Assembly: GCA_950097015.1 (NCBI GenBank)
Contig: CATNEN010000001.1
Location: forward strand, 16,492,001-16,556,000
Direction: 5' to 3'
Length of the DNA stretch: 64,000 nt
From: Macrostomum hystrix
Lineage: Eukaryota; Animalia; Platyhelminthes
The translations under genes and the position numbers were made by a program. Under the pieces are notes generated by a model, which did no database searches, was not told where the DNA came from, and saw only the letters and a program-made list of their open reading frames with translations. Position 1 is the stretch's first letter; each line of letters starts with the position of its first letter. Positions 7,731-39,054 of this stretch are shown in pieces.

Positions 7731-8660
7731 GTGACTTATAAAGTCGTGTACTTTCCAAAGTAGGGTGATAGGCTGCTGCAGGCGCTGCCTGCAGTAGTAC
7801 TGGCCCGCCGTACCTGTAGTGTAACAGTTCGCTATAGGGTTGCAGAATGAGTGCTAGTTAAAACTTAGACTCCTATGTCCCAGTTTCGAGTGCGCGCAAG
7901 CAGTTGTCGGAAGCCGAGGCTGGAAGCAAGAGCTAGCCAGGGCCCCAGGCCCTTTCTCTCCCTTCATTGATCCTCTGATCCCTGTTTTACCACTGCAATT
8001 GCAGGATCTCATTCACTAGGAGTCAGGAACTCCCCATATCATTTTTGCGAGGTCAGGTGACGCAAGAGCACCGGGCCTACTCGCTCTCTCTTTCCACGGC
8101 CCCCAGTCGTGCCCTGAGCATTCCGCTCACTCTATTGTCGCATTCCCGGGGAACTTTATTTCCATTTTTTTGTCCATTATCTGTCCGTTTCTGTCCGTTT
8201 TTAGATGGACATGGCACAAAACTGGAACAGCATGTCCGTTTTCTAATTTGTGGACACTGACAGGACAAAAAATGGACATTGGCGGACTTAACACAAAAGT
8301 GGACAAAAATTGGAAATAAAAGCGGATTAAAAAGGACAAGCATTTGTGCCTTGTACATTTCTGTTGTCCATTTTTTTGTCCGTTTATCTGCAAACATCTT
8401 GTGGACAAAAAGTGGAATTAAAAAAGGAAAATACTGGACTTAGCAAACAATCGGACAGAAGCTGGACGTAAATGCAGTCAAAAGTGGACAAATTGTGCTT
8501 CCATGTCCGCTTTTATATCCAAATTGTTGGCCGCTTCGTCGTCCAACGTTCACGGACACAAATCGGACATCTAATCAGACGAATTATGAAATAGTGAAAG
8601 TTTTCAGTAAATTTTGAAATAGTGCAGGCAGCATCTACTGTATATAGAATGAGATGCTTA

Positions 8661-9512
8661 TGTAGTGAGCCGTAGCTTAGGTGGCTCCCTTTTCCCGGCA
8701 CTGAGTGGCTGTCCGGCCCGCTCTCTCTGGCGCTGTCCGGTCTGCCCTCTTTGTCCTCCCTTTCCCACGGCAGCGCTTGCACTTAGTGTGTTGTCTCTCC
8801 CCCAGGGATGAGTCATCACCTCTTTGTCTCGCGCTGGCCAGTCCCTTTCTTTGTGTGCGCGTTTGTCTGCACTCAGTCAGCGCATGATTCTCCTCATGTG
8901 ACTGGCCTCTCTCTTTGTCTCCTAAAGTGCACGTAAACATGTTTACTGCACTTGGGGCTTTGATTATGGGACAGGAGCCTACGTAGGAGTGACGTTTTGG
9001 CGCCACTGACGTCAGTTGCTATTTTTAGAAACCACGTGAGCCCATCACGTGCTTTCTAACGTAGCACTGACCCTATGGGAGGCCCTTGCCTATAAAAGAA
9101 AGGCCCCGCTCCTCTGGTTCTCTATCCCTTGTGCAGCCCTTGTTCAAACCTTCTCTTGATAACCGTCATACTTGTTCTCTGTGCCATCAGTGTCTAAGTT
9201 TCCTACTTCAGTCTCTGCATGTGACTGCTCGTAAGCTCTGTTCTGGCTAAGCCCTGAAACTAACTTAGCCTTCCACCCCACCATCCGAGCTACGCAGGAC
9301 ACTGACAGCCTGTAATTGCAACTGGAACTCTGCACTGTGTGCTTCTCGAGACTTTGTGACTTCGTTTCTTTCGGGCCAAGGATCCTTCACCTCACCGAAG
9401 GCAGAAGTCCTGACGCCCTGGTGGCAGCGCTACTACTACACTACCTGATATTCTTGGACTTCATATTGGAGTCCGCCGGATCCTCATTGTTAGCAGGACG
9501 ACCGGTACAACA
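8661..9512 (+). mobile_element. Solo LTR (852 bp) nested in the CACTA element
   Basis: TG...CA termini (tgtagtg...tacaaca), CTTA 4-bp TSD at 8657-8660 and 9513-9516, TATAAAA at 9091. Confidence 0.75.
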
Positions 9513-9563
9513 CTTAACTCCGCCAAAGCTTGTCCCAAGCCCAGTTGCAAAAGGAGGAGGGTG
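9511..9563 (+). ncRNA. Twister-ribozyme-like motif upstream of the transposase
   Basis: TAACTCCGCC-aaa-GCTTGTCCCAAGCCCAG-ttgc-AAAAGGAGGAGGGT versus twister consensus UAACUCCGCC..GCCGGUCCCAAGCCCGG..AAAGGAGGAGGGU; P4 has one compensatory change and one mismatch. Confidence 0.7.
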
Positions 9564-9804
9564 GAATGAGACAGTGTCATTTCATAAAGCATGTATATAA
9601 CCGTAGTGCTCGGAACTAAGGAGACGTTATTTTATGATAATATAACAAGTCAGAAATAAATTATATGGGGACATATTTGTTCATTTTTTATATGTTGACG
9701 TGCTCATATGTTAATATGAACGAGTTATTTTTGTGTCAGTATATTCATATACTGTATTTCAGTAAAAAGTGTATTAATAATTGCACCTAAATTGCAGCAC
9801 GGCC

Positions 9805-12800
9805 ATGGATGACGAACAAAACCGGCAGAGAAGGCGCGCGGAGAAAAGACGTCTCGCCATGCAACGCAAACGTGCTGATGTAGCGTTGGCAAATGCACTT
9901 ACCGCCATTTCAAATGCCTTTGTCCGTGTGCCTGATGGTGCTTCTAGTAGTTCGGTCGTCCGTTGTTCGAACGTATCCGCCACCAACGCAGAATCAGAGT
10001 CGGATTCTGAGTCGCACGCCAACGCAGGATCAGAATCGGATTCTGAGTCGCACGCCAACGCAGGATCAGAGTCGGATTCTGAGTCGCACGCCAACGCAGG
10101 ATCAGAGTCGGATTCTGAGTCGCACGCCAACGCAGGATCAGAGTCGGATTCTGAGTCGCACGCCAATGCAGGATCAGAGTCGGATTCTGAGTCGCACGCC
10201 AACGCAGGATCAGAGTCGGATTCTGAGTCGCACGCCAATGCAGGATCAGAGTCGGATTCTGAGTCGCACGCCAACGCAGGATCAGAGTCGGATTCTGAGT
10301 CGTACATCAACTCGGACGCAGACATGGAATCCGGTGCAACTGTTGACGGCAATGCAGGTGTCAACCAGGTGACTGACGCCAATTCGGACAGCGAAGCTGG
10401 CGACAATTCTAACGAGGTATATCCTTAAATATCCTCAATAACATATAGATTATTGGGAATTGACTTAACTGTTTCATGAGTCCTTTTTTTACATCTACTT
10501 ACGGCGGTATAACAATGATCCCAAAAAATTCAACAGGAAAACGTCATAAATGACGCGATGCGTCAGCCGTATCACGATGCTCACCCATCGGTCTCGTTGA
10601 GCGCGGCTATCAGTGAAATTATTGTCTGCTGCAAAGACTTAAGGCTTGGAGATTCCGGTACGAGGCGGATTTTATCAATGGTCCATGCTCTTGTGCCCAA
10701 CAGTCGGCTTCCCAGTTCAGTGAAGAAGCTAAAAAGCTGCACCGCAACATCAGCTATTGACTCTTCGAAGTGCTTCATCGTTTGCAACAGCTGTCATGGT
10801 CATTCGGTTGGTCGATGCTACAAAGGCGCAATCTGCGAGCACTGTGACTCAAACGACATTGCCGACTTCTGGATCCTCGACGTGAAGAGGCAACTTCGTG
10901 TGCTTATTGAGTCACGTGGTCTATTGCAAAACGTCACTTTTCCAGCAGACAGTCCGAACGATGCAGGTAAAGGCTTATGCAAAATCATTTCAGTAAGTGC
11001 AATGAGTATAATAATAATAATGAATATAATAGTGCTATTTCTGTGCATGTCGCCTAACCAGGATTTCTAAGCACCACGAACTGCATCCTGTATCGCGAGT
11101 TCAAAGACGTCATTCGACTAGAAGACAGAAGTGACCTGTCGTACACATTTGCATCGGACGGGTTTGCCACGTTTAGGACTAGCCACGTCGAAATGTGTCC
11201 AGTATACCTGAGCATTAACGAGGTACACAGCAGTCTACGGCTCAGATACGTGGTAGTTGTCGGCTTATGGGCCAACAAGCGGAAAGTACACTCGTCTGCC
11301 TTCCTACCACTTGTTGTACGCGAACTGAACGAATTACGCGAAAGCGGCGTCCCGTATGCTCTGGAAGGCGGAGATCTCCGCTGTTTAAGATTGCATCCCT
11401 TACTGGGGTTATTCGATGCGCCAGCGAGAGCGGACGCTTTTGGAATGCGGCGATTCTCGGCCAAGTATTTGCACTTTAGTAGCCAAAATGGAGTCGATAA
11501 TTTAAGTACAACGTCATTTTAAAATGCACATATACCTATCGATCTTTAAGATACGGCTGCGAGAGGTGCTACATTGTAACATCGCCTCAGGAAGGCGGGG
11601 CCGGGCGACTATTTCCCGTCCACGTCTCCACGCAGATGCGCCGTTCTGCCGAGCGACAAGGATGCACACAAACAGCAGTGCGAAATATGGCGGATACTGT
11701 AGCTATTGTGGAGCACCGCCGCATTCATAATGCCGCACCCCAATCTGACACACTCGGTGTCAAGTGTCTGTCGCCACTTTCCAGCCTTGGAGGATTTGAT
11801 TTCCTGCGGTCCTGTCCACCGTGCTATCTTCATCAGCTGCTCTCAGGCCCTCCCAAGAGGATGCTGTTGCAAATGTTTCTGCCTATTTGTGAGAAGCCTG
11901 AAAAGGGCGCATCCAAGTGTCCAAATCGATGTTCGGTTGGGAAATATCGTGCTGCCGCGGTGAGGTCAACGTCAATTAATCGATGTGAAATTGTTGCGGG
12001 TTTGCAAACCGATGGTCTGTCCTCGTGAAGGAAAGGAGTGTGGGGATGGCGATAGAGTCAGAAGTCGTACCGCAAAGTCTCGCGAGTTGCCGCGGAAAGA
12101 GGGATGAAGGGAGAGATGAAGGGAGAGACAGTGGATGCAGGGAGTGGTCCTCTCGGCCTCAGGCTGGCCAGTCCCACTCAACCCATAGGCCACAGGCATG
12201 ACTGCCGTGCCTACCCCAAGCAGTGCTCGAAACCGGCTAAAAGTCTAAACAGATGTCGGACTACCCGCAAGCGGATAGGACAGGGCTATGTAGCCTACTG
12301 TCATCAGTAGCATGTTCATAACTGACCCCTAACCTTGGTAGCAGTGGTCGACTCGGCCTAGCCTCTTGTCTTAGAAATGCGGAAAGGCTATCGGCAAAGC
12401 GGAAAATGATCTAGGGTAGCGCCACCACCCAATGCGCCTACGTTGCCACCGCAGACATTTGGGAACTTGGGTCCCCGGAGCTCGCAGCTCCTAGTTTGTC
12501 ACACAGATCTTAGACAAGCCGAAAAATAGAGCCTTCTGTAACTTCCGTTTTAGACTAGGGTGAAAACCCCAGAATGGATCGAGACACGCCTCACCAGGGG
12601 ATTCCTGAATCTGCGCTACAGTGGTCTAGAAAGGTGGTACTCAGAACCTGAAAGAGAAATCCATAGCCAGAATCCTACTCATGGGACATCAGACACATTC
12701 GGTACATTAGACTGCAGCCTACACATTAGATAACTAGCAATCCGAGTCTGTGTGAGCTGAGGAAAACAGAGGCAGGAGAGATTAAGCTGAACACTGGCTG

Positions 12801-15551
12801 AGTGATTATGCGAGCGTAAGATTAAAAGATCATCACCCCCACTTCCCTGGCGGTGGAAGCGAGAGGGGGAACGGAAGGGAAACTCAATTGGCAGGGGAGC
12901 TTGACACGCGCTCCCAATTCCGCCAGGAAACGAGGAAAACCCGCCAAGGAATTCCCCACCCCTGGGCAGAAAGACAACACGTGCTACACTCCGCATTTTA
13001 CTTGCAAATCCCTAGCTCCATATTGCTCTCATACGCGCTTACAATTGCCTTCCTGCCGCAGCTTTCAGCTCGGCTGTGCCAGAGCCCATTCCCCTAATAG
13101 ATTAGCCACTCATGGTAGAGGGCTGTCTAAGGTGAAAATAAAGAGAAAGTAATAGCATGACGGAAGGATTTAAATTGTTATTAAATTGGCCTAATGTTTG
13201 AATAATTGGCTAGTAATTACTGCTTTTATTAGGCTAGATAAATCCCTCGCCCAAGCCCGTAGCTTCCGCCTAGACTAAAGAAAGGTTCCTTTGGACTAAC
13301 AATGGTAAAACCGCTGCGCGGGTTACTTAGCTGATGTCGCTTCGGCCGCGTGCTGCAATCCCGTTGTTCTCGGGGAAGAGGATGGGGTAAGACAGCAAAG
13401 GCCGGGAAGGGAAAGATGCTGCGAGTCGGCAGGGGCCCACACGCTTGGAGCTCAAGGCTCAATTTCAACGGCTCACCTAAAGAGGTGGCTCGCGCTCAGG
13501 GGGAATGGGGGCAGGCAATGGGCCCGCGCTAACTGTGGAGCTATGAGCTCTAGGGTCTATGCCCTAAGTGGGTCCGGAAAGGTGCTCTGGGTCCGGTGGG
13601 AGTCCGGCCCGGCAAAAGTAAGTCCGGCAGGGAAGAAGGGGAAGAGCCGGTGGGAGAAAAAAGGTCCTAGAGGGAGCAGCGCAGCGCGCTTGCTTAAATA
13701 GGCCTTGCAGCACGCCAACCCCGACATCCATCAAAGCAACCCACATTCGCGCCCGCCTGTCAACGGGGAATCGAAGCGACGACAGGCCGCCCCAATTGCC
13801 CAATGAACCGGCGGCGGGAAACGACAGGTGCTCATCGAGAGCAGCCATCGGCAGACGGCCAACAATTGTTACTCCGCCGGGACAATGGAAGCGCAGGCGC
13901 CGACCTGCCTACAGTGACATTTACGAGTATCTACAAGGGGGAGATCATAAAGTCGAGCTGGGCTCGAATACTGTAAAGAAGAGGGGACTTTAAAGAATTT
14001 AATGATCACTCATAACGCGCGAGTGAGCCCCTATATCTGATCGCGGTTTGGAGGGGAATTATGACCTAAACTAGTTCATACAGTAACATTATGGCCGCGA
14101 TCAGTCATTCCTACGGGGAGTCTAGACAACTCCGGAGAGAGAGGATTCGACAGCTACTTGATTCACCGCCGCCTCAAACCCGGCCCTAAGATTAATGATC
14201 TTGTTTTGTGGCCAGCTGCTATGTGGGTCGCAATTATTAGTTACTTAAAAATTTGAAAAATTATGCTGGCTCACATTCCCGCTCGATTCCCGCAGCACAC
14301 TCCACATCAGATGCATGTTTACAAGTAGATGTATAACTCAATTTGCTCTATACCTTTCATACTGCAGTTCTGTGCAACGTCAAGGGGTCCGACGACTCAA
14401 TGAGTTGCGTCACTTCAGAGGCCACGAATGGGAGATGTGGCTGCTGGCGTATGGGCCCATGGTGTTGCATGGAATCTTAGACGATAGACACTTTCAGCAT
14501 TTCATGCTACTGTCGTCGGCAACCTTTTTTCTGACATTGGAGCGGGTGCCATCCAGTGAACTGCCCCACGTAAAGCAGTCACTGCTGTACTTCCACCGGA
14601 AGTTATGGCGCCTCTACTCAAATCGTGCGCTAACATATAATGTGCACCAGGTATGTGCGGCTCTTGTAATAGTACACACACATAAAGTTCCGTAAGTGTT
14701 GGCTCTGATATCGTTGACTTAATGTGCGTCATCAAACATGCATAGGTCTGTCGCCATATGCTGCAGCATGTAATCCTTGGAGGGCCCCTACACTACCAGT
14801 CCGCTGGTCTATTCGAGACCATGCATTCCCGACTGCGGCGACGTATTCACGGATCTCGCAACGTGGATGTTGAGCTCGTTCGTGCCATTGAGCGAGATGT
14901 TGCTGCCCTCGAGGTATGATTTGTGGCAGAAGAAAAGCACTTTTATAAGTAATATCCTTTCTTTCCTTCTGTGCTTCTACGCTTCATGCTTGACAGGTTG
15001 CGGCCGAATACCAGGGCGTTCTCATCGGCAATAGAGGCGCCCTATATGGCAATGGACGCTCTGAGCTTACCAGCGTGTCGGTTGGGTCGCAGCGCGTAGT
15101 CCTCAGTCGACCAACAAGTATGGTGAACGGTTGGATTGGCGCCTACTTAACGACGGGTCTTTTCATCGAAGTATGGAAACATCGCATCGAAGGGTCCCCG
15201 AGGTCGACGTCTGCATTCGTTGGCCTACGGGATCAGGAGCCATTTAGCTTCCGCTTCGGTCGCGTCGCCGGTATTGACCGTCATGGTTTGAATAAGGTCC
15301 GCATTGATGTCGAACTTCTTCCTGTTGCGCCGGCCGTGAATTATTTGACACAACTGTCAAACGTTCGCTCTGACGCCAATGAACGCGGATGCCCCTGTGC
15401 ACATGTTCGGCGTTTGTTGACCGACCCGTTCGGAGATTTGACAGCCTTTGGACTTTGCGTGCAGGTGAACATTGATGAAGTTGTCGGTGTCTGTGCTGTC
15501 TCTGAATCGTACATTGCTCTGCTGCCTCACTCTCAGTTGTGCTACTCCTGA
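9805..15551 (+). CDS. EnSpm/CACTA-type transposase, spliced (exons ~9805-10416, 10537-10966, 11062-11464, 11551-~11985, ~14314-14650, 14746-14913, 14997-15551), interrupted by a solo LTR
   Basis: GT-AG junctions phase-consistent; motifs CxxC..CxxC, YTFASDG...CPVYLSINE, FDAPARA..YGCERC, GVKCLSPL, RHFRGHEWEMWLLAYGP..FQHF, YNVHQ, GGPLHYQSAGLFE are characteristic of CMC transposases. Confidence 0.9.
9985..10302 (+). repeat. 36-bp coding tandem repeat (ESDSESHANAGS, ~9 copies) in transposase exon 1
   Basis: Direct inspection. Confidence 0.95.
11986..14309 (-). mobile_element. Solo LTR (2.3 kb), inverted, inserted in the transposase gene; same family as the LTR ending at 6813
   Basis: TG...CA termini, GATG 4-bp TSD (11982-11985 and 14310-14313), reverse-complement homology to 4975-6813; removing it restores a continuous frame (SINRC-MFTSRC). 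Confidence 0.88.
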
Positions 15552-15978
15552 ATTTTATTCATCACCCACTCGCTATTACTGGTAATGCAACGGAGAACCT
15601 TCGAGTGCCCGCGTTCGACGCCTATGACTCCCCGTTGTTACGAAGTAGAATATACGCTTTGTACACAGGTACCACTGTGTACTTATTTTTTGCCCGGTAA
15701 TCATCATGTATCACATATATATAGACGACTTCACTTCAAGTGACTTGTACTTTCAGACTGTCATTTCATTTCTATTACGTTCTCGCCATAATTTACGTAG
15801 ATTAACAAAGATTAACAAAGATGAACAAAAACCTCTCTAAAAAGTAGGTAGCTCTTCATATCCCAATTCCAAAAGTAATATAACCCGATCTCGAAATGTG
15901 CGATTACATTTCTTACTCCCTTTTCACAATGACAACTGTTCCAACGTTTGAGTACTTGCACCAACTTGCAGCTAAAGC

Positions 15979-16863
15979 ATGGACCATTGGACACACGCTG
16001 CAAACTGCTCAATTTGCGGTGCGCTTGTGGAAGAAAACCGCATACTACGCGCCGAACTGAACCGTTTACGAACGGGGCGAGCTCCGTCCCCTGTTTTCAG
16101 CACTAGTCGCTCACTTCGTGTTCGGAGAGCAGTCGTGTCATCCGACGAACTGCCCTGCACACAAACTCTGAACAGTGCATGGCCTTTTGCCGAGGATGCC
16201 ACATCCGAGACAGTAGGATCCGCTGGCTGCCTGTCCCAGGACTGGAATGACGAAGGTTCGGAGACAGTAGGACCCGCTGGCTGCCTGTCCCAGGACTGGA
16301 ATGACGAAGGTTCGGAGACAGTAGGACCCGCTGGCTGCCTGTCCCAGGACTGGAATGACGAAGGTTCGGAGACAGTAGGACCCGCTGGCTGCCTGTCCCA
16401 GGACTGGAATGACGAAGGTTCGGAGACAGTAGGACCCTTTGTGGCGTCAACCGAGGCCCATGCACCTTCTGCGTCATCCACAGATGCAGATGCGGACCTG
16501 TATCATCGCTACTGTGCTGATTATAATCAGCTACCGGAGCCCCACAGAATGCAGCATGCTTGCGTCTTCACTGCGCGCAAGCGCGAGGAGCGCATGGAGC
16601 TGGAAGCCCACTGCTGCGTAGAATGCGAGAACTGGTATGCGGACCTCTCACCTAACACCAAACGACAGCGGCTACAACTGGCTGGTCGTCATCGGTCAAA
16701 CCAACCTCGGCCGCGATATGACAAGGACTTCTTCAAGATTGCCATGCCAGAAACGCCTCCAGAGGCGCCGGTGGAAGCCATGCACGTTGGACTGCGACGC
16801 CGTATCCCGCTGAAGGGGGCTACGGGCAGGCAGGAGTTTATGAAACCGAAGGAGTCATCTTAA
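15979..16863 (+). CDS. 294-aa intronless protein with a CtIP/Sae2 (RBBP8)-like C-terminal domain, N-terminal CxxC plus short coiled coil, and 54-bp repeats
   Basis: ARKREERMELEAHCCVECENWYADLSPNTKRQRLQLAGRHRSNQPRPRYDKDFFKIAMPET aligns without gaps to the human CtIP C-terminus ([61 protein letters not shown], recalled from memory); CxxC and RHR are conserved. Confidence 0.85.
   Translation: MDHWTHAANCSICGALVEENRILRAELNRLRTGRAPSPVFSTSRSLRVRRAVVSSDELPCTQTLNSAWPFAEDATSETVGSAGCLSQDWNDEGSETVGPAGCLSQDWNDEGSETVGPAGCLSQDWNDEGSETVGPAGCLSQDWNDEGSETVGPFVASTEAHAPSASSTDADADLYHRYCADYNQLPEPHRMQHACVFTARKREERMELEAHCCVECENWYADLSPNTKRQRLQLAGRHRSNQPRPRYDKDFFKIAMPETPPEAPVEAMHVGLRRRIPLKGATGRQEFMKPKESS
16205..16437 (+). 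repeat. 54-bp coding tandem repeat (SETVGPAGCLSQDWNDEG, ~4.3 copies)
   Basis: Direct inspection. Confidence 0.95.
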
Positions 16864-17502
16864 GACTGCTTTTCACGACTGTCAAGAAACGCTTCTCAGT
16901 GTGGCCAAAATTCCCTTCTCTGTGGTGGTATAAAAAAATCCCGTCGATAGATTGTAACCTTACCCATACCCATAATTATGTGAATAGTGTTGCAAACTGT
17001 CTAGTAGTATTCTATCGACCAGATCGGTTGCGCAATGCAGGGTCAATCATGTTTAGACTTCTAATTGTACATTCATAGTTCTCCAGTGTCCTTCTGATCA
17101 GTCCCTTCGATGTCCTCCATTTCCTTTATTTACCTATCTGGTAAAGCTTGCGCATCCGGAGTTTGCTAGTAACCATGAGGCTCTGAACTACTGTCGCTGG
17201 GAAGAAAAGGTACAAATGGAAGGCGCATGCTGCTGATAAAAGATTCTAGCCTCACGTGTACAATCAGTTCCTAGCTGGGACTCTTTGAATGCATTTTTGT
17301 TAGTGACTACATTCGAACATGTCTTTTCGTCGCTATCTGCGGCGCCAAATTATTTTCTGCCTTTGAGTCACTGAGTCATTAATGATTCACAATTGTTGCT
17401 TTTGTGGTTGTCCACAATTGTGTTATGGTTGTCGTTGTTGTTCTAACCATATTTTTGCAGACCGTCGTCAATTACTAAACTTACGAAGCTAAAGCCTTCA
17501 AG

Positions 17503-19280
17503 ATGCCGGCTAAAGGTCATAAGACGCGACACACTGCGAAGAAGACCAACAAGACTGGAAGTGGCCAAAAGAAAGAAGCAGCTAGTAAGGCCAACAAGGA
17601 CTCTGTAACGAACCCAAACACTGCAGAACAGCCAGAGAACGCTGTCGAAACTTCAACCACGAAGTATCGGCCATACAAGGTTGAACTGACAGCTCGCTGG
17701 TTTGTTTTTGAGTTCGTCGACTCTGGCCACTGGCAGGTGGTTTCGACTGGAGACCATGCCTGTCGTGTAGTGTCTGTGCTGGCGGACGCCCCACAAGCTC
17801 CAGTGGACGTTGGATCAGAGGTCCAGATTGTGCGCACTGCCAGGTAAGCTTGACATAATTTGCCAAACTGAAGACTTATAGATCCAGAATGAGGATAATG
17901 TACTTAACAAATGCTATTATCGAAACTCTATCTACACTGCAGCTCAGGTGCCAAGCGATGGTGCGGCAAGCTCGTCAAAGGCCCAAAAAGCACAAAAGAT
18001 GAGGCCAGGGCAATCGCTCAAATGGCTTTGTTGGAAGTGAACGAGCCAGACCTTCCACGAAACTGCCCTTCGTGCACTAGCCTACTCATTCAGGCCAATC
18101 GTAATCGAGACCTAACGTCAACTCTGCGTATGTACTCACGACACGAGGCGAGGGTCATTTCACAAATTCGTGCATTAATGAATAAAGAAATATCCCATTC
18201 TCCTTCAATTGTTTCTTGCGTTGCCTGTTAATTGCCACTGTATGAACTCTTTGCACAATTCGTGGAATGGCCCTCGAATAATTTTGTATTTCTGCGTTTC
18301 GGACTTATAATTTCTTTAATACTCTTCAATAAAACAGAATTCCTGCATATATCTCATCCATTATAGGCGAAGAGTTGCACCGAGAGCGCGAACGGGTGCA
18401 GGAAAGAGAAGCTGAGATAGCTACTGTGCGACAGCAATGTGCTTTTCTAACCCGTCGCGTCGCAACATTGGAAGCCGATTCACGCCTTCATCAACGCGTT
18501 GTGACAACAATGCAGCACAGACAGCAGGAGGTCAACGCACTTTTGACGAAGGCCTCGTCAAAACTGGTCGAGCCGGTCAGTCATGACCACCAAGACATTG
18601 TAGCCCATGACGTAGACATCGACGCTGCTGCTGCCATGCACGATCCTGCGGCCTCTGATCTAGCTTTTGTTGCCCATGCACCGCTGTCGGTGTCGCAAAC
18701 TCGGGTCTTGGAAGACCAGGTGCAGCATCGATCGACGGCCGACTGCGATAGCTCTGAATTGAAGCCGCTAAGTCCCCAGCAGCTATTCGTGCTGGTGCCT
18801 GCTGCTCGTATAGCCGAAATAAACAGCAGGAGGGCTACGTTGGAGAAGTACCGCAACACCGAAAATTGTCCGGCTTCACTACTATTGCGTGCAAAGTTGG
18901 CGCTGGCCCGCTCACTTATTCGGGCTTTTTTCTCAGACAGAGAGCTAACTGTCTCAAACATCACCGGTCGTAATGTCGCCGGCCGGACAACAGTACCGGC
19001 GAATCCGGCGAAGGTAAAATTAATGGAAGCCTACCTGAAAGACAACGGCGCCACTTTGTCGCCGCGTGAAGCCGGTAAACTGTTTGCAACATGCAAGGAG
19101 ACGGCCTTAAAACGCCTCGGCCTGTATGCTCCAAAAGCGAAGTCGGCTGCTTCGAGTCGAGCCAAACAATCGACCCATTCACGACACCAGCCACAGACTG
19201 AAGTGGTTCGTGAACTGCAGCCGCAGCCGCCCGCCGCCGAGGATCACGTGGATCTATTGAACTCCATGATGGAAGGCTGA
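17503..19280 (+). CDS. Spliced accessory gene (exons 17503-17843, 17943-18127, 18367-19280) with CxxC, coiled coil and C-terminal BEN-like domain
   Basis: Phase-consistent GT-AG introns; LARSLIRAFFSDRELTVSNITGR...ANPAKVKLMEAYL matches the BEN-domain pattern (LL..FF...EL...N.TG...LDP.KV..I..Y). Confidence 0.78.
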
Positions 19281-19476
19281 GTGGGATTGATGAGCAGACA
19301 CGCGACCCAAATTTGGCGAACTCCCGACCCGGAGACTGCGAATCCAATCCCATGATTTAAGTCTCTTACAATCTCGATCCTCAGACTTGAAATCCCGATC
19401 CGAAAACTGAACATCCCGATCCTCAGTCTAGAAATCCCGATTCCCAGGCGGCAAATCCCATATCCCGTCCCTTGAA

Positions 19477-19708
19477 TCATGGAGCTGGAGTCGTTTTTTG
19501 TAGCTTTGGGTCGGAATGACAGTTTTTTGTGTAGGCTCCATTTTTTCACAGTTCCGTTTTGCATATCTTGCAACGTATTTTGCTTTTATTCCCAGGCATT
19601 TACCCATCGTGGCTATAGTCGATATAGCAAAAGTAGAATCATGGAGCTGGAGTCGTTTTTTGTAGCTTTGGGTCGGAATGACAGTTTTTTGTGCAGGCTC
19701 CATTTTTC
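19477..19708. repeat. ~70-bp direct repeat (19477-19546 and 19639-19708)
   Basis: aatcatggagctggagtcgttttttgtagctttgggtcggaatgacagttttttgtg.aggctccatttttt is present twice. Confidence 0.9.
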
Positions 19709-19885
19709 ATGTCAAATTGTATGTTTCAAATTGCATGTCAAATAAATATTCAAGACGACGATTGTAGTCACTTCATAAAATGTTCTTTAATTCTTGCCAC
19801 AGCTTGATGGCTATTAAATGAAATGTTTATACACATGTATTTGAATTGTGTATTCCATGCCTTTCGTCGTTTCTATATTACATGG

Positions 19886-20092
19886 CCGTTTCGATGTCCG
19901 GATCTCAGTCCGTCCCATCCGTGGGTGCCCTGGTCCGCTTCCTCGTCCGTTTCGATGTCCGGATCTCAGTCCGTCCCATTCGTGGGTGCCCTGGTCCGCT
20001 TCCTCGTCCGTTTCGATGTCCGGATCTCAGTCCGTCCCATCCGTGGGTGCCCTGGTCCGCTTCCTCGTCCGTTTCGATGTCCGGATCTCAGT
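19886..20092. repeat. 61-bp tandem repeat (~3.4 copies), GTCC-rich, in the right subterminal region of the CACTA element
   Basis: Direct inspection. Confidence 0.93.
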
Positions 20093-20386
20093 CTGCTGTA
20101 AAAAGAAAACGGAAATATAAACGGAAAAACTTCTGGGCATCATACGGGCCAGGAGTTGGACTTGTAGCTGCCAAATCTTCCAAATCTGCCAAATAAGTCC
20201 GTATACGTGACCTTTGTCCGCTTTTTTTTACACTGCGTAGATAGGCCACTTCCGGAAAATTTGTCCGGCAAAAACGGTAGAGGGCGTGCCATAAACAGGA
20301 CTAAAAAACGGAAATAAAGTTCCCCGGGTTAGCGACAACCCCCTCAATTTTTGCAAAATCCTAATTTCCGGTTGGACTTCGCCACG

Positions 20387-20833
20387 ATGGAGGAGGCTGC
20401 AGCCGAGCTGCGCGCCGCCACTCAGGCGTTTGAGATGGCTGCCGAGCGAGATCCGCGTCGGAGGGTACGCCAGGTTAGGGCAGAGCTGGACGAGGGGCAG
20501 GAGCACCCCAGTGAAATCCAGGCCGTCCGCCGGGAACAACAGCAGCTGGCGCAAGAATTGGACAAAGTCACCCAACAGCTAGCGGAGGTCACGCGGCAGC
20601 TGCGGGAGCCGAAGCCGACCCCGGTCCACCCTCCTTGCCAGCACCCAACTGGGCACCATTGGTACCCCAGGCAGGAGAAGCCGTGGGCACGAAGAAGGTA
20701 CCGCGAGGGCTCTGCCGCGGGAAACGGGAGTGGTGGTGCCGACTGGAGGCAGCTCAATTACCCGGAAGCGCCTCAGGCAGCTCGGGCGATCGAGGCCCCC
20801 CCGTCAGTGCCTCCCTCCTCGAAGTCCGAGTGA
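20387..20833 (+). CDS. Short Gag-like coiled-coil ORF of the LTR element
   Basis: Lies downstream of the PBS/leader and immediately upstream of the protease; coiled coil QQQLAQELDKVTQQLAEVTRQL; no capsid or zinc-knuckle motif recognised. Confidence 0.5.
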   Translation: MEEAAAELRAATQAFEMAAERDPRRRVRQVRAELDEGQEHPSEIQAVRREQQQLAQELDKVTQQLAEVTRQLREPKPTPVHPPCQHPTGHHWYPRQEKPWARRRYREGSAAGNGSGGADWRQLNYPEAPQAARAIEAPPSVPPSSKSE

Positions 20834-20859
20834 ACTCACTCGGCCGAGTCCCCACCTGA

Positions 20860-21264
20860 GTGCGCACCCGCCCCAACCGCTCTGAGAAGCTTAGTGAGGT
20901 GTGGGTCGCCTTGGAGGTGGACGGAGCACCCCATGACCTCCTGATCGACACTGGGTCAATAGTGAATGTGCTCCCGGGCTCGTTGTTATCAATCTTCTCC
21001 TATTACTTATTCGAACCCCCTCAATTTTCTTTAGTTGCTTACAATGGCACCCCTAAAATTGCACAGGCGCAAGTCAAGGTCAAGTTACGGGTTGGCGCCG
21101 AAGCGTTGGACACGCTGTTCTTAGTGGTCGAGGGCGATTGCTCTCCCCTACTCGGCGCCTCCTGGTTGGCTCAACACCATGCCATTCCTTACTTTGACTC
21201 GCGCCAATTAATCATTTACCGCCAGTCCATTCCCTTTTCGCTCAGGCGGAAGCCTGCATTTTAG
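20860..21264 (+). CDS. Retroviral-type aspartic protease (retropepsin), terminating without RT
   Basis: LLIDTGSIVNVL and C-terminal PLLGASWL motifs. Confidence 0.88.
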   Translation: MRTRPNRSEKLSEVWVALEVDGAPHDLLIDTGSIVNVLPGSLLSIFSYYLFEPPQFSLVAYNGTPKIAQAQVKVKLRVGAEALDTLFLVVEGDCSPLLGASWLAQHHAIPYFDSRQLIIYRQSIPFSLRRKPAF

Positions 21265-35218: not shown

Positions 35219-35990
35219 TCACTTGTAGCAGACTGGCTGCCGAGGACGAAGCCCGTACGGCTCCCGGATCTCCGGGCTCCGGTCCCGGTTGGCACCTATG
35301 GCTGGAGACTCCAGGTCTGGAGGCAGGTCGACCACATCAAGTTTCACCGGAGCAGCACCGGTTTCAGAAGCCTCTGGTGGCCTCGGAGTCTCTGGCCGGC
35401 CGCTCCATTGGTTCGCGTGCGCCAGCCGCAAGCCACCGTCGGGCAGGTCAGCAGGAGCAACCAGCGCCGTGTTCAGGCCGTGCTGCACCACGAACTTGGC
35501 CGGAATCGGCGGGGTTCCGGGACGCATTCTCAGCCAGATCGAATCGCCCGCCTGCTCAGTCATCGTTAGTGGGTGGCGAAGCCGCCGGCCCCACATGAGG
35601 ACATCCGGGGACGCGGTGCGATTCCCGCTCGGCCTGCTGGTCCTGATCGTCAACAGCAGCTTCTGCAGGAAGTGGTCAAACGGCACCACCTTCGTCCACG
35701 CCTTGAGCCCGTCCTTGAGGATCCTCACCAGCCTTTCTGCCTGACCGTTGGAGGCGGGGTGATACGGCGGAGTGTGCAGCTCCCGGCATCCGATGCTCTC
35801 CAGCCACCGAGAAACTTTCTCCGACTTGAACTCGGGTGCGTTGTCAGACACCAGAGTTCGGGGCACTCCGTTCCTAGCGAAGACCGCTCTCAGAACACGC
35901 AGAACGCTGTCAGCCGATCGGTCCGGCACCTGAATCGCCTCAGGCCAGCCTGAGTAGGAGTCAGACAGCAGCAGGAGCAATCCAACACCA
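35219..35990 (-). CDS. Integrase catalytic core and C-terminus, frameshifted from the upstream polyprotein
   Basis: DSYSGWPEA, LVSDNAPEF, PYHPASNGQAERLV. Confidence 0.93.
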
Positions 35991-38900
35991 ATCCAACACC
36001 AGAAATGTCGCAGTGGTCCATGTGGACTCGAGACCATGGCTCACTTTCAGCTGGCCAAACATCAATCTTCCTCGGCAGCACTGGTCGAGTTTCTGAGCAC
36101 TGCTGGCACCGCTGCACAAAATCTCGGACATCTCGATCCAGGCCAGGCCACCAGAACTCCTTGGCAATGTGCGCCTTGGTGTTGTCCGCGCTCGGGTGCA
36201 CTTCATCATGGGCAGCCTCTAGAATCCGCCTGCGGAGAATGGGTGGCGGCACAATTCTGGTTCCATGGATCACCAAACCGTCTTCCACTGACAATGCTTC
36301 CCGGCACGCCTTGTACGGCCTTTCAACCTGCGACACCTGGCCCCATCTGCCTGATCTGATTCTCTGCTGCAGCCGTCTCAGCAGCGAGCACATCTTGGTC
36401 CCTTCTCGTAGCTCCTGAAGAGTCACCAGCGTCCCTTCCGAGATGAACTCTGACTCCAGCTGATGGACCGACTCATTCAGCAGGTCTTTGTTGACAAAGC
36501 TCAGGCGAGACAAAGCATCAGCATCCACCATCAGCCTTCCAGGCACGTACTCCACCTCATAGTCAAAAGCCGATAGCCGCAGGGCCCAGCGCGTTAATCT
36601 TGCCGACACAGTTTTAGGCAGGTTTTTACTCGGATTGAAGATGTACTTCAGAGGCTCATGGTCCGTCTGAAGCGTGAACCTCTTGCCCAGCAGCATCTTG
36701 CGAGCTCTTTCCACCGCCCACACAATGGCCAGCGCCTCTCTCTCAATGTTCGAATAGTTCGCTTCAGCTTTTGTCAAGGCACGAGACAGGTACATGACAG
36801 GATGGCCGGACTGAACTAAGACAGCTCCTAACGACTGCTCGCTAGCATCGACTCGCAGGCACACTGGGGCGCTGACGTCAAACGGTTTCACGCACGGATT
36901 CGAACTCAGGCACTCCTTCACTTGGGCGAAAGCTGCTTCAGCTGCCGGACTCCAGTCAAACACACGATCCAATTGGAGAAGTTCCTGCAGCGGCCGGCAC
37001 TTCTCGGCAAAATTGGGGACCAGCCGACCATAAAACTGGGCCAGCCCCAGAAAGCGCTCCAAATCTTTCTTGTTCCTCGGAGCTTCAACTTGCTGAATTC
37101 TCAGAACCATTCCGGGATCTGGTTTAATTCCCTCGACATCAATGATATGGCCCAGGAACTTAAGACTGCTAGCCTCCATGATGCACTTAGCCTCATTGAT
37201 TTTCACATTCGCTGCTCGCAGCTTGCCTAGCACCACTTCCCGGATGTTCTCCAGCTCTGCATGGGACACCGCTCCCATGAGGACGTCATCCTGGTACACA
37301 ATCACGCTCGGGTGCTCACCCAGCAGCTTCTCCATCTCACGCTGAAACACCGAAGGAGAGACCTTAATGCCGTACGGCAGGCGGTTGAATCGGTAGCAGC
37401 CGAACGGCGTGTTGATGGTGGTGATGTCCTTGGACTCGTCCTCCAGCGGAATCTGATAGTAGGCGTCAGACAGGTCCAGTCGGCAGAACAGCTTTTTGTT
37501 GGCCATCTTGGAGAATGCGGTCTCAATTGATGGGGTCAGGTACGTTTGATCCTGCACCCACTGATTGACCGCCGTATAGTCTCCACAGATCCGCACCGAC
37601 ACCTTGTCCGACTTCACGGTCACCACGATCGGGCTGCCCCACTCAGACGACGCTACCTTCTTGACTATTCCCGCCTTCTCCATCAGGTCCAGCTCCTTCT
37701 TCACTAACGGCCGCAAAGCTAACGGCAGCTCGCGGGCTGGTTGAAAAATCGGCCGAGCTCCTGCCTTTAACCGAATCTCTCCTAAGGCTCCCTTGATGCC
37801 CAACAGACTCTCATACCTGTTGTTGCTGGCTGGCCCCGCCTCGTTCGAATGGTGCGCTGGCAGCGAGCTCAACAGGTCCCTGCCGAGCAGTCCGAACTTC
37901 TGCTGGCAGTCAATGACAGGCAGCTCCGCCGCGATGAAACAGCCGTCAGAGCCATCAGTCTCTAGAAGGCACTCCAGGATGCCGAGCTGCTTCATCACAT
38001 GGCCGTCATAAGCCAGCATTCGTGATTTCACTGACTTTAGTGCCGGCCTTCCAAGATCCTCCCAGATCCTTTTCGAGATTAACGAGCACGAGGCGCCGCT
38101 GTCCTTCTCCATCTTCACCTGCTTGCTGTTGATTCGCACCATGCAGAAGGCGGCCGGGCTGCCCTCGCCGCAGTAGAACACCGGATCGTCGCGGGTCACT
38201 ACTGAGACGGCACCCTTGGCTTCGGTCGGTGTGGCGAAGTGAGTCCTGGCGCTCCGACAGACCTTGGCGAAGTGGCCGTGTTTCCCGCACTGATTGCAGG
38301 TGGCCTTCAGAGCCCAGCAGTCAGTAGGCCGGCGATGTGACATTCGGCCGCAGCGCTGGCAGCTTTGAGCCTCATTCGGCTGCCTCTGCTTCCACTTCTG
38401 AACTGCATTCACGCTATCCACTTCTAGCTCCTTTGCTGGCATCTCAGGTGTCATGCTATCCATCTGGTGCACCGTGGTGTCCAGCGCAGCTGAGGCCCCT
38501 GACGAGAAAGTGCTCACCATCTGAAGCTGCTGAACATAGTCGGTGATCTGGTCGACGGATAACGCAGCCGTGACCTCGCGCTCGAGAACCTTGCTCCTGA
38601 CCTCCTGATTGTTGAGGCCGGCGATGAGTCGCATCTTGACCAGCTGCTCTGCTGGGTCAACGTCCTTGTCCTTCAGCTTTTCAAACTCGCACGCCACAGC
38701 CTGTTCTCGAAGACGGGCGGCAAATCCTGCTATGGTCTCGCCCTCGCCCTGGCGCAGGGACATAAAGGCCGCTCTCTCTGCGATCAGCAGCCTCTTCTGC
38801 GGTTCCAGAAACTTTACTAGACTCGACTTGATGTCGTTCCATTTCATCTTTGAAAGCTGACTAGGTGCAACCAGCTGCTTCACCTTGATGAGCTGGGCTA

Positions 38901-39054
38901 CTCCGAGGCAGCCCAGGAAAGCGTCAGTCAGTGCCAGGTTGCCATCGGTGTCCTGAATTCCTTTTGATCGCGCCTGTGCGTCAAAAACTTCAACCCATGC
39001 TCGCAGCTCATCTATACTGCCGAGGGGCAATGGGTCCCGCAGCTTGATTGACAT
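35890..39054 (-). CDS. Gag-Pol polyprotein (two CCHC knuckles, protease DSG, RT YQDD, RNase H, integrase HHCC)
   Basis: CQRCGRMSH..C, CNQCGKHGHFAKVC, KDSGASCS, RLPYG, YQDDVL, VDAS, TDHEPL, ADALSR, H..H..CQQC; domain order PR-RT-RH-IN. Confidence 0.95.
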   Translation of the reverse strand: MSIKLRDPLPLGSIDELRAWVEVFDAQARSKGIQDTDGNLALTDAFLGCLGVAQLIKVKQLVAPSQLSKMKWNDIKSSLVKFLEPQKRLLIAERAAFMSLRQGEGETIAGFAARLREQAVACEFEKLKDKDVDPAEQLVKMRLIAGLNNQEVRSKVLEREVTAALSVDQITDYVQQLQMVSTFSSGASAALDTTVHQMDSMTPEMPAKELEVDSVNAVQKWKQRQPNEAQSCQRCGRMSHRRPTDCWALKATCNQCGKHGHFAKVCRSARTHFATPTEAKGAVSVVTRDDPVFYCGEGSPAAFCMVRINSKQVKMEKDSGASCSLISKRIWEDLGRPALKSVKSRMLAYDGHVMKQLGILECLLETDGSDGCFIAAELPVIDCQQKFGLLGRDLLSSLPAHHSNEAGPASNNRYESLLGIKGALGEIRLKAGARPIFQPARELPLALRPLVKKELDLMEKAGIVKKVASSEWGSPIVVTVKSDKVSVRICGDYTAVNQWVQDQTYLTPSIETAFSKMANKKLFCRLDLSDAYYQIPLEDESKDITTINTPFGCYRFNRLPYGIKVSPSVFQREMEKLLGEHPSVIVYQDDVLMGAVSHAELENIREVVLGKLRAANVKINEAKCIMEASSLKFLGHIIDVEGIKPDPGMVLRIQQVEAPRNKKDLERFLGLAQFYGRLVPNFAEKCRPLQELLQLDRVFDWSPAAEAAFAQVKECLSSNPCVKPFDVSAPVCLRVDASEQSLGAVLVQSGHPVMYLSRALTKAEANYSNIEREALAIVWAVERARKMLLGKRFTLQTDHEPLKYIFNPSKNLPKTVSARLTRWALRLSAFDYEVEYVPGRLMVDADALSRLSFVNKDLLNESVHQLESEFISEGTLVTLQELREGTKMCSLLRRLQQRIRSGRWGQVSQVERPYKACREALSVEDGLVIHGTRIVPPPILRRRILEAAHDEVHPSADNTKAHIAKEFWWPGLDRDVRDFVQRCQQCSETRPVLPRKIDVWPAESEPWSRVHMDHCDISGVGLVLDCSCCCLTPTQAGLRRFRCRTDRLTAFCVF

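What the first reader, a model, noticed from the sequence alone, without database searches (positions are those of the whole stretch)
8145..20328. CACTA/EnSpm transposon that encodes its own CtIP/Sae2-like DNA end-processing protein
Seen: between perfect TIRs with a TT TSD lie three co-oriented genes, namely the transposase, an intact intronless 294-aa ORF (15979-16863) and a BEN-domain gene. The ORF's residues at ~16576-16758 align without gaps to the conserved Sae2/CtIP C-terminal domain (RKxEER, H-x-CxxC, YAD, RHR, F-F/W..P-x-T). It also has an N-terminal CxxC plus coiled coil, like a miniature CtIP. Known: this domain stimulates the Mre11-Rad50 nuclease to open hairpins, clear protein-blocked ends and start resection. 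Inference: the element carries a captured repair factor to process the break left at excision or to steer repair toward homologous gap repair, which would restore the donor copy and raise copy number. It could instead be a dominant-negative decoy. I am not aware of this cargo being described for CMC transposons.
Basis: partly seen in the sequence, partly recalled or inferred. Interest (0 to 1): 0.92.

Follow-up and report, generated by a model that had tools for sequence, protein, structure and literature searches.

The report
Flatworm transposon carrying a mini-CtIP gene
A 12-kb cut-and-paste transposon in a Macrostomum-type flatworm genome carries, beside its transposase, an intact small gene descended from the host's DNA-break-processing factor CtIP/Sae2; selection has kept this gene across the whole transposon family, so the element probably brings its own helper for the breaks it makes, but that function is untested.

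Summary
Window 8145-20328 is a DNA transposon with perfect 19-nt inverted ends. Its TT target duplication is proven by a paralogous empty site.

It holds three co-oriented genes:
- a 7-exon transposase with an open 954-codon frame;
- the intronless 294-aa ORF at 15979-16863;
- a multi-exon gene with a probable BEN domain.

The ORF's C-terminus is a true CtIP/Sae2 domain. Pfam alone is sub-threshold for this copy (12.5-16.6 bits). A profile of the family, however, finds 313 proteins. All 40 top hits tested are Pfam SAE2, and 13 also carry CtIP_N (hhalign 99.7%, E 4e-26).

At least 33 related copies exist in this genome. The gene order transposase, mini-CtIP, BEN-like gene is kept between elements only 40-60% identical. 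Between subfamilies, synonymous sites are saturated and pN is 0.17-0.40.

The nearest relative is the host's own 3-exon CtIP gene, so the gene was most likely captured within the Macrostomum lineage.

The "CACTA" label is loose. The ends are CCCGG and no Pfam transposase model matches. Embedding similarity, 2-3-bp duplications and subterminal repeats point to the CMC superfamily.

Function is inferred, not shown. No RNA data could be obtained. I found no paper describing such cargo. This scan had already noted the same family at other loci of this genome.

The parts
8143..8144 (.). Left copy of the 2-bp target-site duplication (TT)
   Evidence: The paralogous empty site has a single TT at ...GCATT^AGCG....
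8145..8163 (+). Left terminal inverted repeat, CCCGGGGAACTTTATTTCC
   Evidence: Perfect 19/19 reverse complement of 20310-20328. The flank's homology to its paralog stops exactly at 8144.
8164..8420 (+). Left subterminal repeat region (GTCCGTTT / AAAYGGAC-type motifs in both orientations)
   Evidence: All 7 exact GTCCGTTT matches in the 64-kb window lie in the two element ends (expected 1.5). Short inverted repeats appear.
9805..15551 (+). Transposase gene with 7 exons: 9805-10416, 10537-10966, 11062-11464, 11551-11964, 14368-14650, 14746-14913, 14997-15551. Exon 1 holds a 36-bp x 8.9 acidic repeat.
   Evidence: tblastn of the intact 751-aa relative L028:7355-9607 covers residues 3-750 in six pieces. 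All introns are GT-AG and the frame is open for 954 codons. Atlas scores 0.98 to Transposase_21/DUF1258 clusters for the relative. No Pfam model matches.
12000..14310 (.). Nested, unrelated 2.3-kb repeat inside transposase intron 4 (intron 11965-14367)
   Evidence: At least 40 genomic copies at 80-99% identity. The left edge lies between 11965 and 12000 and was not resolved.
15979..16863 (+). Mini-CtIP gene, an intronless 294-aa ORF
   Evidence: Intact ORF. At least 33-38 relatives in the genome. Conserved synteny. Purifying selection between subfamilies.
15979..16098 (+). Conserved N-terminal module: MDHW.HA, CxxC (C10, C13), helix to about residue 31, then SPVF (residues 37-40)
   Evidence: Conserved in 5 diverged copies. 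AF2 predicts helix 3-31 with pLDDT 80-92. Similarity to host CtIP exon 1 is only E 0.11.
16207..16437 (+). 54-bp x 4.3 tandem repeat encoding the ...DEGSETVGP... motif. Other copies carry GSETQGP, 1-6 times.
   Evidence: TRF, 99% matches. Motif seen in other copies and as a single DDEGSET in the host gene.
16507..16824 (+). CtIP/Sae2 C-terminal domain (ORF residues 177-282): RKREER, HCCVEC, YAD, RHR, FF, MPET, basic RRR.PL tail
   Evidence: hhalign against the CtIP alignment gives 99.7%, E 4.1e-26 over 106 columns. Pfam SAE2 is the top and only real hit at 16.6 bits. Profile search. AF2 pLDDT is 82-95 here.
17503..19280 (+). Third gene, multi-exon: 17503-17844, about 17911-18231, and the BEN-like exon 18367-19280
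   Evidence: The first two pieces are one contiguous 294-aa ORF in the C7 copy, followed by a BEN-like ORF. Donor GTAAGC at 17845 and acceptor ...TATAG at 18366. BEN: Pfam E 0.058, Atlas 0.90.
19886..20093 (+). Right subterminal tandem array (61 bp x 3.4), holding three GTCCGTTT motifs
   Evidence: TRF; motif positions.
20310..20328 (-). Right terminal inverted repeat
20329..20330 (.). Right copy of the TT target-site duplication

Best explanation
Window 8145-20328 is a structurally intact member of a diverse, low-copy family of cut-and-paste DNA transposons (CMC-like) in a Macrostomum-type flatworm.

The family's standard gene set is a transposase, a 'mini-CtIP' and a probable BEN-domain DNA-binding protein. 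The mini-CtIP descends from the host's CtIP/RBBP8 gene. It keeps that protein's MRN-contacting C-terminal domain: CxxC, RHR, the conserved threonine that aligns with human T859, and the basic tail. It adds a short N-terminal helix with a CxxC and repeated GSET(Q/V)GP motifs.

Shown: the element's boundaries, the homology, the family-wide retention and the purifying selection.

Inferred: the protein engages the host Mre11-Rad50 complex at the breaks the transposase makes. There it promotes clipping of blocked or hairpin ends and resection, so that the donor gap is repaired from the sister or homologue. That restores the element and gives a net gain in copies.
For: Boundaries: perfect TIRs, TT TSD and an empty site.

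Transposase: open 7-exon frame. CMC affinity from Atlas 0.98 to Transposase_21/DUF1258 clusters, 2-3-bp TSDs and subterminal repeats.

Homology of the ORF's C-terminus:
- Pfam SAE2 is the top hit in 8 of 8 family members, best E 2e-5.
- A genome-wide PF08573 search hits only this family, four loci reaching the cut-off: 25.7 bits, and 27.7-28.7 when neighbouring matches in the frame are added.
- The profile search finds 313 proteins, the top ones named RBBP8.
- 40 of 40 tested hits carry SAE2 and 13 carry CtIP_N.
- hhalign gives 99.7%.

Family-wide retention: the order transposase, mini-CtIP, third gene recurs in at least 9 loci whose proteins are 35-60% identical.

Selection: pS 0.7-0.9 against pN 0.17-0.40 between subfamilies.

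Mobility: non-autonomous derivatives with their own TIRs (CCCGGTTGCCAAA) still carry the gene. One has a 3-bp TSD, and three copies are about 97% alike.

Origin: the TE copies and the Macrostomum host CtIP form one clade, support 99/95. The host gene has 3 exons and an N-terminal coiled coil.

Host partner: Mre11 is present in the genome.

Known biology: Sae2/CtIP activates MRX/MRN to cleave hairpin-capped or protein-blocked ends, and the Sae2 C-terminus contacts Rad50 (PMC11662671). No revertants of Ac/Ds excision, which leaves hairpins, were recovered in yeast lacking Mre11 or Sae2 (PMC3299998).
Against: - No expression data: no RNA run was listed.
- This copy alone is below Pfam's SAE2 cut-off (12.5-16.6 against 19.8 bits).
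- The CDK site that activates CtIP/Sae2 (human T847, yeast S267) has no S/T-P counterpart in any copy. The host protein lacks it too, so this does not discriminate.
- Self-association of the N-terminal module got no verdict, and its similarity to CtIP N-termini is not significant.
- This subfamily is single-copy at the DNA level.
- How CMC transposases cut is not established here; the hairpin idea rests on general knowledge of related superfamilies.
- The host keeps its own CtIP, so the need for a second one is unexplained.
Confidence: 0.55

Rival explanations
1. Decoy or inhibitor. The mini-CtIP binds Rad50/Mre11, or the host CtIP, without activating. This blocks resection at transposon-made breaks, so that the excised element's ends are not degraded or the donor site is rejoined quickly by end joining.
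For: The protein lacks most of CtIP's middle region and has no S/T-P at the activating CDK position. Mobile elements are known to inhibit Mre11-Rad50; phage N15 TelN is an example (PMC12624138, listed). The domain's conservation fits a binder as well as an activator.
Against: The host CtIP lacks the same CDK site, so its absence is not specific to the TE copy. The threonine aligned with T859 and the basic C-terminal tail are both conserved. In Sae2 the equivalents are needed for activation rather than for binding (PMC11662671).
Confidence: 0.2
2. Checkpoint damper. Like Sae2, the protein limits MRN/ATM persistence at ends. This keeps stem or germ cells that undergo transposition from arresting or dying. 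The repeated GSETQGP motifs would act as kinase target or sink sites.
For: Sae2 down-regulates Rad53 activation independently of its extreme C-terminus (PMC11662671). GSET(Q)GP motifs, which contain the S/T-Q kinase consensus, are conserved across subfamilies and vary from 1 to 6 copies.
Against: In the window's own copy the motif is TV, not TQ. No data bear on signalling. The part conserved most strongly is the MRN-contacting C-terminus.
Confidence: 0.1
3. Neutral passenger. A captured host gene fragment with no role for the element, as in Pack-type gene captures.
For: Gene capture by DNA transposons is common (general knowledge). The subfamily in the window has one copy only.
Against: Open frames persist in elements whose synonymous sites are saturated, with pN 0.17-0.40. 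There are 34 invariant columns in the domain across 8 sequences. The position between the transposase and the third gene is fixed. Deletion derivatives retain the gene.
Confidence: 0.05
4. Reverse direction. The 'host' CtIP of Macrostomum took its last exon from a transposon copy (domestication or replacement) rather than the transposon capturing the host gene.
For: Monophyly of the TE copies against the host gene is unresolved, support 71/52. A quick tree nested the host inside TE diversity, SH-aLRT 89.
Against: CtIP is universal in eukaryotes. The host gene has introns and an N-terminal coiled coil, and it is conserved at 73-91% between two Macrostomum species. The next outgroup, P0002, is a normal short CtIP sharing the same lineage-specific motifs.
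Confidence: 0.05

Closest known systems
CtIP/RBBP8, Sae2, Ctp1, COM1 (Pfam SAE2, PF08573), the host cofactor of Mre11-Rad50-Nbs1
   Same: The C-terminal domain is homologous over about 106 columns, with CxxC, RHR, F-W/F, P-x-T and the basic tail. The layout is an N-terminal helix, a disordered middle and a C-terminal domain. An SPVF motif is shared with the Macrostomum host protein. From my own knowledge, SPVF is the BRCA1-BRCT binding motif of human CtIP.
   Different: It has 294 aa against 481 or more in the flatworm host and about 900 in vertebrates. It is intronless, lies inside a transposon and is multi-copy. It has no CtIP_N match. There is no S/T-P at the T847/S267 position, and all TE copies have Asp one residue later where the host has Ala. 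Its N-terminal MDHW...CxxC module is not found in CtIPs.
CMC superfamily DNA transposons (CACTA/En-Spm, Mirage, Chapaev); the En/Spm two-protein system TnpD plus TnpA
   Same: Short TIRs, 2-3-bp TSDs, subterminal repeat arrays and a large DDE transposase. The transposase shows D...D-A-P-A...C-x-x-C...F-E spacing (read; the comparison is from my knowledge). Atlas scores 0.98 to Transposase_21/DUF1258 clusters. A second, probably DNA-binding, protein (BEN-like) could play the TnpA role of binding the subterminal motifs (inference).
   Different: The termini are CCCGG, not CACTA or CAC. No Pfam transposase model matches even at E 10. The only sequence relative found outside the genome is one unnamed 863-aa ENA protein. 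The element carries a third, repair-factor-derived gene.
DNA transposons that carry host-type enzymes as stable cargo, such as fungal transposon lineages encoding TET/JBP dioxygenases (PMC12730594). From my own knowledge also Helitrons with RPA-like genes, Academ with XPG-like nuclease, and plant CACTA/MULE elements with ULP1 protease.
   Same: A non-transposase gene of cellular origin is kept across a transposon lineage and presumably serves the element.
   Different: Here the cargo is a cofactor that starts double-strand-break resection. I found no report of that in 8.4 million papers searched by words.
Mobile-element proteins that target Mre11-Rad50, such as phage N15 TelN, which inhibits bacterial MR (PMC12624138)
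   Same: A mobile element encodes a protein aimed at the host's end-processing nuclease.
   Different: Those proteins are unrelated in sequence and are inhibitors in bacteria. This one is a homologue of the eukaryotic activator.

Membership tests
SAE2/CtIP C-terminal domain (Pfam PF08573) | This copy scores above Pfam's gathering cut-off (19.8 bits) | tested here: not met
   12.5 bits for the whole ORF and 16.6 bits for the domain alone. SAE2 is nevertheless the only family hit.
SAE2/CtIP C-terminal domain (Pfam PF08573) | Family-level homology: relatives pass the cut-off, and a profile of the family finds true CtIPs reciprocally | tested here: met
   Four genomic relatives reach the cut-off (25.7 bits; 27.7-28.7 with neighbouring matches in the frame added). 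8 of 8 members hit SAE2. 313 profile hits, with 40 of 40 tested carrying SAE2 and 13 carrying CtIP_N. hhalign 99.7%, E 4e-26.
SAE2/CtIP C-terminal domain (Pfam PF08573) | Conserved CxxC and RHR motifs, an aromatic pair and P-x-T (the threonine aligned with human T859 / yeast T279) | tested here: met
   H38, C39, C40, C43, H65, R66, F78, P84 and T86 are invariant in alignment A3 and align to the CtIP consensus.
SAE2/CtIP C-terminal domain (Pfam PF08573) | CDK phospho-site S/T-P at the position of human T847 / yeast S267, needed to activate MRN/MRX | tested here: not met
   The position is Y, V, G, R or H in TE copies and Q in the host. None is followed by P. An S-P in the conserved LSPxx(K/R) stretch upstream exists in all copies and might substitute (inference).
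Full-length CtIP | N-terminal oligomerisation domain (CtIP_N or coiled coil) | tested here: inconclusive
   A confident helix 3-31 is predicted. There is no CtIP_N hit. An HMM of the TE N-termini scores 8 bits or less on 153 CtIPs. The best match to host exon 1 has E 0.11. The dimer prediction gave no verdict.
Full-length CtIP | Stimulates Mre11-Rad50 endonuclease | not testable with these tools
   This needs biochemistry or genetics.
CMC (CACTA/Mirage/Chapaev) transposon superfamily | Transposase homologous to Transposase_21 / DUF1258 | tested here: inconclusive
   No Pfam hit at E up to 10. Atlas scores 0.98, with 221 of 256 features shared and all ten best hits in that family set. Sequence searches found only one unnamed relative.
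CMC (CACTA/Mirage/Chapaev) transposon superfamily | 2-3-bp target-site duplication | tested here: met
   TT in the window, verified by the empty site. CAT in the C3 copy of another subfamily.
CMC (CACTA/Mirage/Chapaev) transposon superfamily | Termini 5'-CACTA or CAC... | tested here: not met
   The termini are CCCGGGGAAC... here and CCCGGTTGCC... in another subfamily.
CMC (CACTA/Mirage/Chapaev) transposon superfamily | Subterminal repeat arrays | tested here: met
   GTCCGTTT occurs 7 times, only in the element's ends. A 61-bp array lies at the right end. GGCCCA arrays lie at both ends of the C3-type element.
BEN domain (PF10523), third gene | HMM match above the cut-off (23.2 bits) | tested here: inconclusive
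   14 bits, E 0.058. The C7 homologue gives no hit. Atlas scores 0.90, with 24 of 30 hits being BEN clusters.

The most novel reading that the evidence does not exclude
A eukaryotic cut-and-paste transposon encodes its own activator of the Mre11-Rad50 nuclease. This mini-CtIP has lost the cell-cycle (CDK) switch and is made by the element itself. It opens or clips the ends left by the transposase and forces resection, so that the donor gap is copied back from the sister or homologue. A conservative transposon would thereby become an effectively replicative one.
Probability: 0.3. Interest if true: 0.9.

Novelty: new variant of a known kind. Interest (0 to 1): 0.8.

Why it matters
How a cell repairs the break left by a cut-and-paste transposon decides whether the element gains copies, and so far that choice has been seen as the host's. 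A transposon family that carries a selected homologue of CtIP, the protein that commits a break to resection, suggests the element takes part in that choice itself.

The protein is a natural, compact (294-aa) variant of the CtIP C-terminal module that has diverged freely for a long time. This makes it useful for mapping what the MRN-activating domain really needs. The finding also gives a directly testable system in a regenerating flatworm whose stem cells tolerate heavy DNA damage.

If the protein is a portable resection activator or inhibitor, it would also interest genome-editing work, where CtIP fusions are already used to favour homology-directed repair.

Tried and rejected
- **Self-association.** Complex prediction on two copies of residues 1-75 plus zinc gave no verdict (score 0.12). 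It is not evidence either way.
- **RNA evidence.** The look-up of sequencing runs listed no run.
- **More genome sequence.** For most other copies only one half of the element is in hand, and about a dozen further copies could not be read.
- **Transposase by sequence.** Pfam on every transposase piece and on the intact 751-aa relative found no family. Two word-indexed homology searches found only one unnamed ENA protein, P0164.
- **N-terminus.** An HMM of the TE N-termini against 153 CtIPs gave nothing significant.
- **Other TIRs.** A TIR search for the C24/C31 copies turned up only simple repeats.
- **Structures.** The PDB sequence search and Foldseek found no relative; the CtIP C-terminus has no solved structure.
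- **Rad50.** The zinc-hook HMM found nothing in the genome. The model is short, and this is not evidence of absence.

Rejected readings:
- That the apparent extension of the inverted repeat beyond 8145 (TTGTCGC...) belongs to the element. It is a palindrome in the target sequence and is present at the empty site.
- That scallop and oyster 'RBBP8-like' short proteins are TE-borne. They are fragments of normal long CtIPs.
- That the 2.4-kb gap in the transposase is a deletion or break. It is an intron holding a nested repeat.
Full report
**What is in the sequence**

The stretch 8145-20328 is bounded by perfect 19-nt inverted repeats, CCCGGGGAACTTTATTTCC at 8145-8163 and its reverse complement at 20310-20328. 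Each is flanked by TT.

The flanks belong to a repeated sequence. Window 8004-8144 and 20369-20480 both match C1:10103254-10104133, among other loci. In that paralog the site reads ...CTATTGTCGCATT^AGCGACACCCCCTCAA... with a single TT. The window has ...GTCGCATT[element]TTAGCGACAACCCCCTCAA.... This is an empty site. It proves the insertion, its exact ends and a 2-bp duplication.

The apparent extension of the inverted repeat outward (TTGTCGC) is a palindrome of the target, not part of the element.

The octamer GTCCGTTT occurs seven times in the 64-kb window against 1.5 expected. All seven are in the two subterminal regions. The right end also holds a 61-bp x 3.4 tandem array.

**The transposase**

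No Pfam model matches any piece. A related element on contig C24 has an intact, intronless 751-aa ORF (L028:7355-9607). Another on C1 has a 704-aa ORF.

The C24 protein aligns to the window over its residues 3-750 in six collinear pieces that change frame. Every junction has GT...AG.

With exons 9805-10416, 10537-10966, 11062-11464, 11551-11964, 14368-14650, 14746-14913 and 14997-15551, the frame is open for 954 codons and ends at a stop. I only counted the frame in a script.

Five introns are 83-120 nt. The fourth is 2403 nt because it holds a nested 2.3-kb repeat with at least 40 copies elsewhere in the genome.

The intact relative gets no Pfam hit either. The protein atlas puts it at 0.98 next to clusters carrying Transposase_21 and DUF1258, the CACTA and Mirage transposase families.

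The 2-3-bp duplications, short TIRs, subterminal repeats and the D...DAPA...CxxC...FE layout are visible; the comparison to the superfamily is from my own knowledge. Together these make it CMC-like. The termini are CCCGG, however, not CACTA. Sequence searches found only one unnamed outside relative, P0164, at 44% identity. I treat superfamily membership as probable, not proven.

**The ORF and its homology**

15979-16863 is an intact 294-aa ORF. On its own it scores 12.5 bits on Pfam SAE2, or 16.6 bits for the domain alone, against a cut-off of 19.8. A single-sequence test therefore fails.

The family-level test passes clearly:
- The genome holds at least 33-38 relatives.
- A genome-wide PF08573 search hits only members of this family, four of them at or above the cut-off.
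- All 8 aligned members have SAE2 as their top family.
- A 117-position profile of the domain found 313 proteins at E <= 1e-3 in 1.84 billion, and the match sits at the C-terminus of proteins of 400-1500 aa.
- All 40 top hits tested carry Pfam SAE2 and 13 also carry CtIP_N.
- The named hits are 'DNA endonuclease RBBP8' of oyster, scallop and catfish.
- Profile against profile gives 99.7% probability, E 4e-26, over 106 columns.

AF2 with a 33-row alignment predicts a confident N-terminal helix (3-31, pLDDT 80-92), a disordered middle and a confident C-terminal domain (pLDDT 82-95). No solved structure is related.

**It is a transposon gene, not a stray host gene**

tblastn with the window's gene pieces shows the same order in loci whose proteins are only 35-60% identical to the window's: transposase, mini-CtIP, then the third gene. 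This holds on C24, C31, C7, C34, C25, C38, C1 and C30.

Between subfamilies, synonymous sites are saturated (pS 0.7-0.9) while pN is 0.17-0.40. Closely related copies give dN/dS of 0.14-0.72 on very few changes. The domain has 34 invariant columns across 8 sequences.

A second subfamily has ends CCCGGTTGCCAAA and GGCCCA subterminal arrays. Its C3 copy has a 3-bp duplication (CAT). Three copies about 97% alike are deletion derivatives without a transposase, yet they still carry the CtIP-type frame. At C38:3367xxxx a left end lies 140 bp before a full-length copy.

The window's own subfamily is single-copy at the DNA level.

**Where the gene came from**

The closest outside protein is Macrostomum lignano Mlig004387 (P0001, 395 aa; P0151, 481 aa partial). 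Its ortholog in this genome lies on C39, on the minus strand. It has three exons within L038, an N-terminal coiled coil and canonical introns, and no transposase beside it. That is the host's CtIP. It also suggests that the genome is a Macrostomum species or a close relative (inference).

In a careful tree the seven TE copies and the two host sequences form one clade, support 99/95. The next branch is a short metagenomic CtIP, P0002. Whether the TE copies are monophyletic against the host is unresolved, at 71/52.

Capture of the host gene in this lineage is the simplest reading. The reverse direction is not excluded.

Besides the domain, TE and host proteins share a DDEGSET motif and an SPVF motif. 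In human CtIP, SPVF is the BRCA1-BRCT binding site (my own knowledge).

The TE N-terminal module is MDHW.HA..C..C.AL.EEN..LRAEL.RLR. It is strongly conserved among TE copies. It resembles the host's '...SLTAENQRLRSEL' only at E 0.11.

**What it probably does**

Sae2/CtIP activates Mre11-Rad50 to cleave hairpin-capped or protein-blocked ends, through contacts of its C-terminal region with Rad50 (PMC11662671). In yeast, no revertants of Ac/Ds excision, which leaves hairpins, were recovered without Mre11 or Sae2. The authors of that study caution that end joining is also affected (PMC3299998).

The TE protein keeps the conserved core, the threonine aligned with T859 and the basic tail. Mre11 is present in the genome.

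I therefore favour an MRN-engaging helper that processes transposase-made ends and promotes resection and homologous gap repair. This part is inference.

The activating CDK site (T847/S267) has no counterpart, but the host protein lacks it as well. All TE copies have Asp at the next position where the host has Ala. This could mimic phosphorylation (speculation).

The alternatives are a decoy, a checkpoint damper and a neutral passenger. They are weighed in the Rival explanations section.

The third gene is probably a BEN-type DNA binder. It may bind the subterminal motifs as TnpA does in En/Spm (inference).

**Novelty and limits**

Word searches of the paper library found no report of a transposon carrying CtIP/Sae2/RBBP8. 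The nearest analogue is fungal transposons carrying TET/JBP dioxygenases (PMC12730594).

This scan had already noted the same family at other loci of this genome: 17 notes held the search words and eight were shown. Those notes agree with my reading. I tested their main claims again here on this copy.

New for this copy are the empty site, the 7-exon open transposase, the nested repeat, the host gene's exon structure, the missing CDK site and the motif comparison.

Not done:
- Expression, because no run was listed.

Noticed in passing
window 12000-14310 (inside transposase intron 4): A 2.3-kb repeat with at least 40 copies in the genome at 80-99% identity, one of them 99% identical. The same repeat also sits inside another member of this transposon family, at C1:11072856-11075180, between its transposase and its mini-CtIP gene.
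   Followed up: partly
window 8004-8144 and 20369-21264: The transposon is inserted into a repeated retroelement-like sequence. The flanks match more than 10 other loci at 78-89%, and a gag-type aspartyl protease ORF lies at 20860-21264 (Pfam E 9e-5). Relative to its paralog, the window's copy also lacks about 590 bp just right of the insertion site.
   Followed up: partly
window 35222-39096, minus strand: An LTR-retrotransposon pol region with protease, RT, RNase H, integrase zinc finger and integrase core. There is a 1068-aa open frame followed by an overlapping 272-aa frame. The window is TE-rich.
   Followed up: no
window 9983-10302 and L028:6748-7230: The transposase's first exon encodes an acidic tandem repeat (36 bp x 8.9, SESDSESHANAG). 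The C24 relative has a different acidic repeat (DEGDSDASPADADRHSDTS) in the same place, so the repeat turns over while the property is kept.
   Followed up: no
L028:7355-9607 against window 9805-15551: Related elements differ in gene structure. The C24 and C1 (L033) transposase genes are intronless single ORFs, whereas the window's copy has six GT-AG introns.
   Followed up: partly
L035:7809-8669: In the C30/C1 subfamily an extra 286-aa ORF with cysteine-rich motifs lies between the transposase and the mini-CtIP gene. It is absent from the window's element.
   Followed up: no
P0002 (315 aa, JGI metagenome contig of 1.6 kb): A short complete CtIP with an N-terminal coiled coil. It shares the lineage-specific motifs (FNRIPEP, RHRANQP, LPPTP, KRRRRPL, DVPTQVV) with the Macrostomum host and TE proteins. 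It is probably from another flatworm and would be a useful outgroup.
   Followed up: partly
L009:979-1830 (C24) and L011 (C31): In the otherwise intact C24 and C31 elements the mini-CtIP frame is open, but the conserved start Met of MDHW is Lys (KDHW). Either another start is used or these copies have just lost the gene.
   Followed up: no
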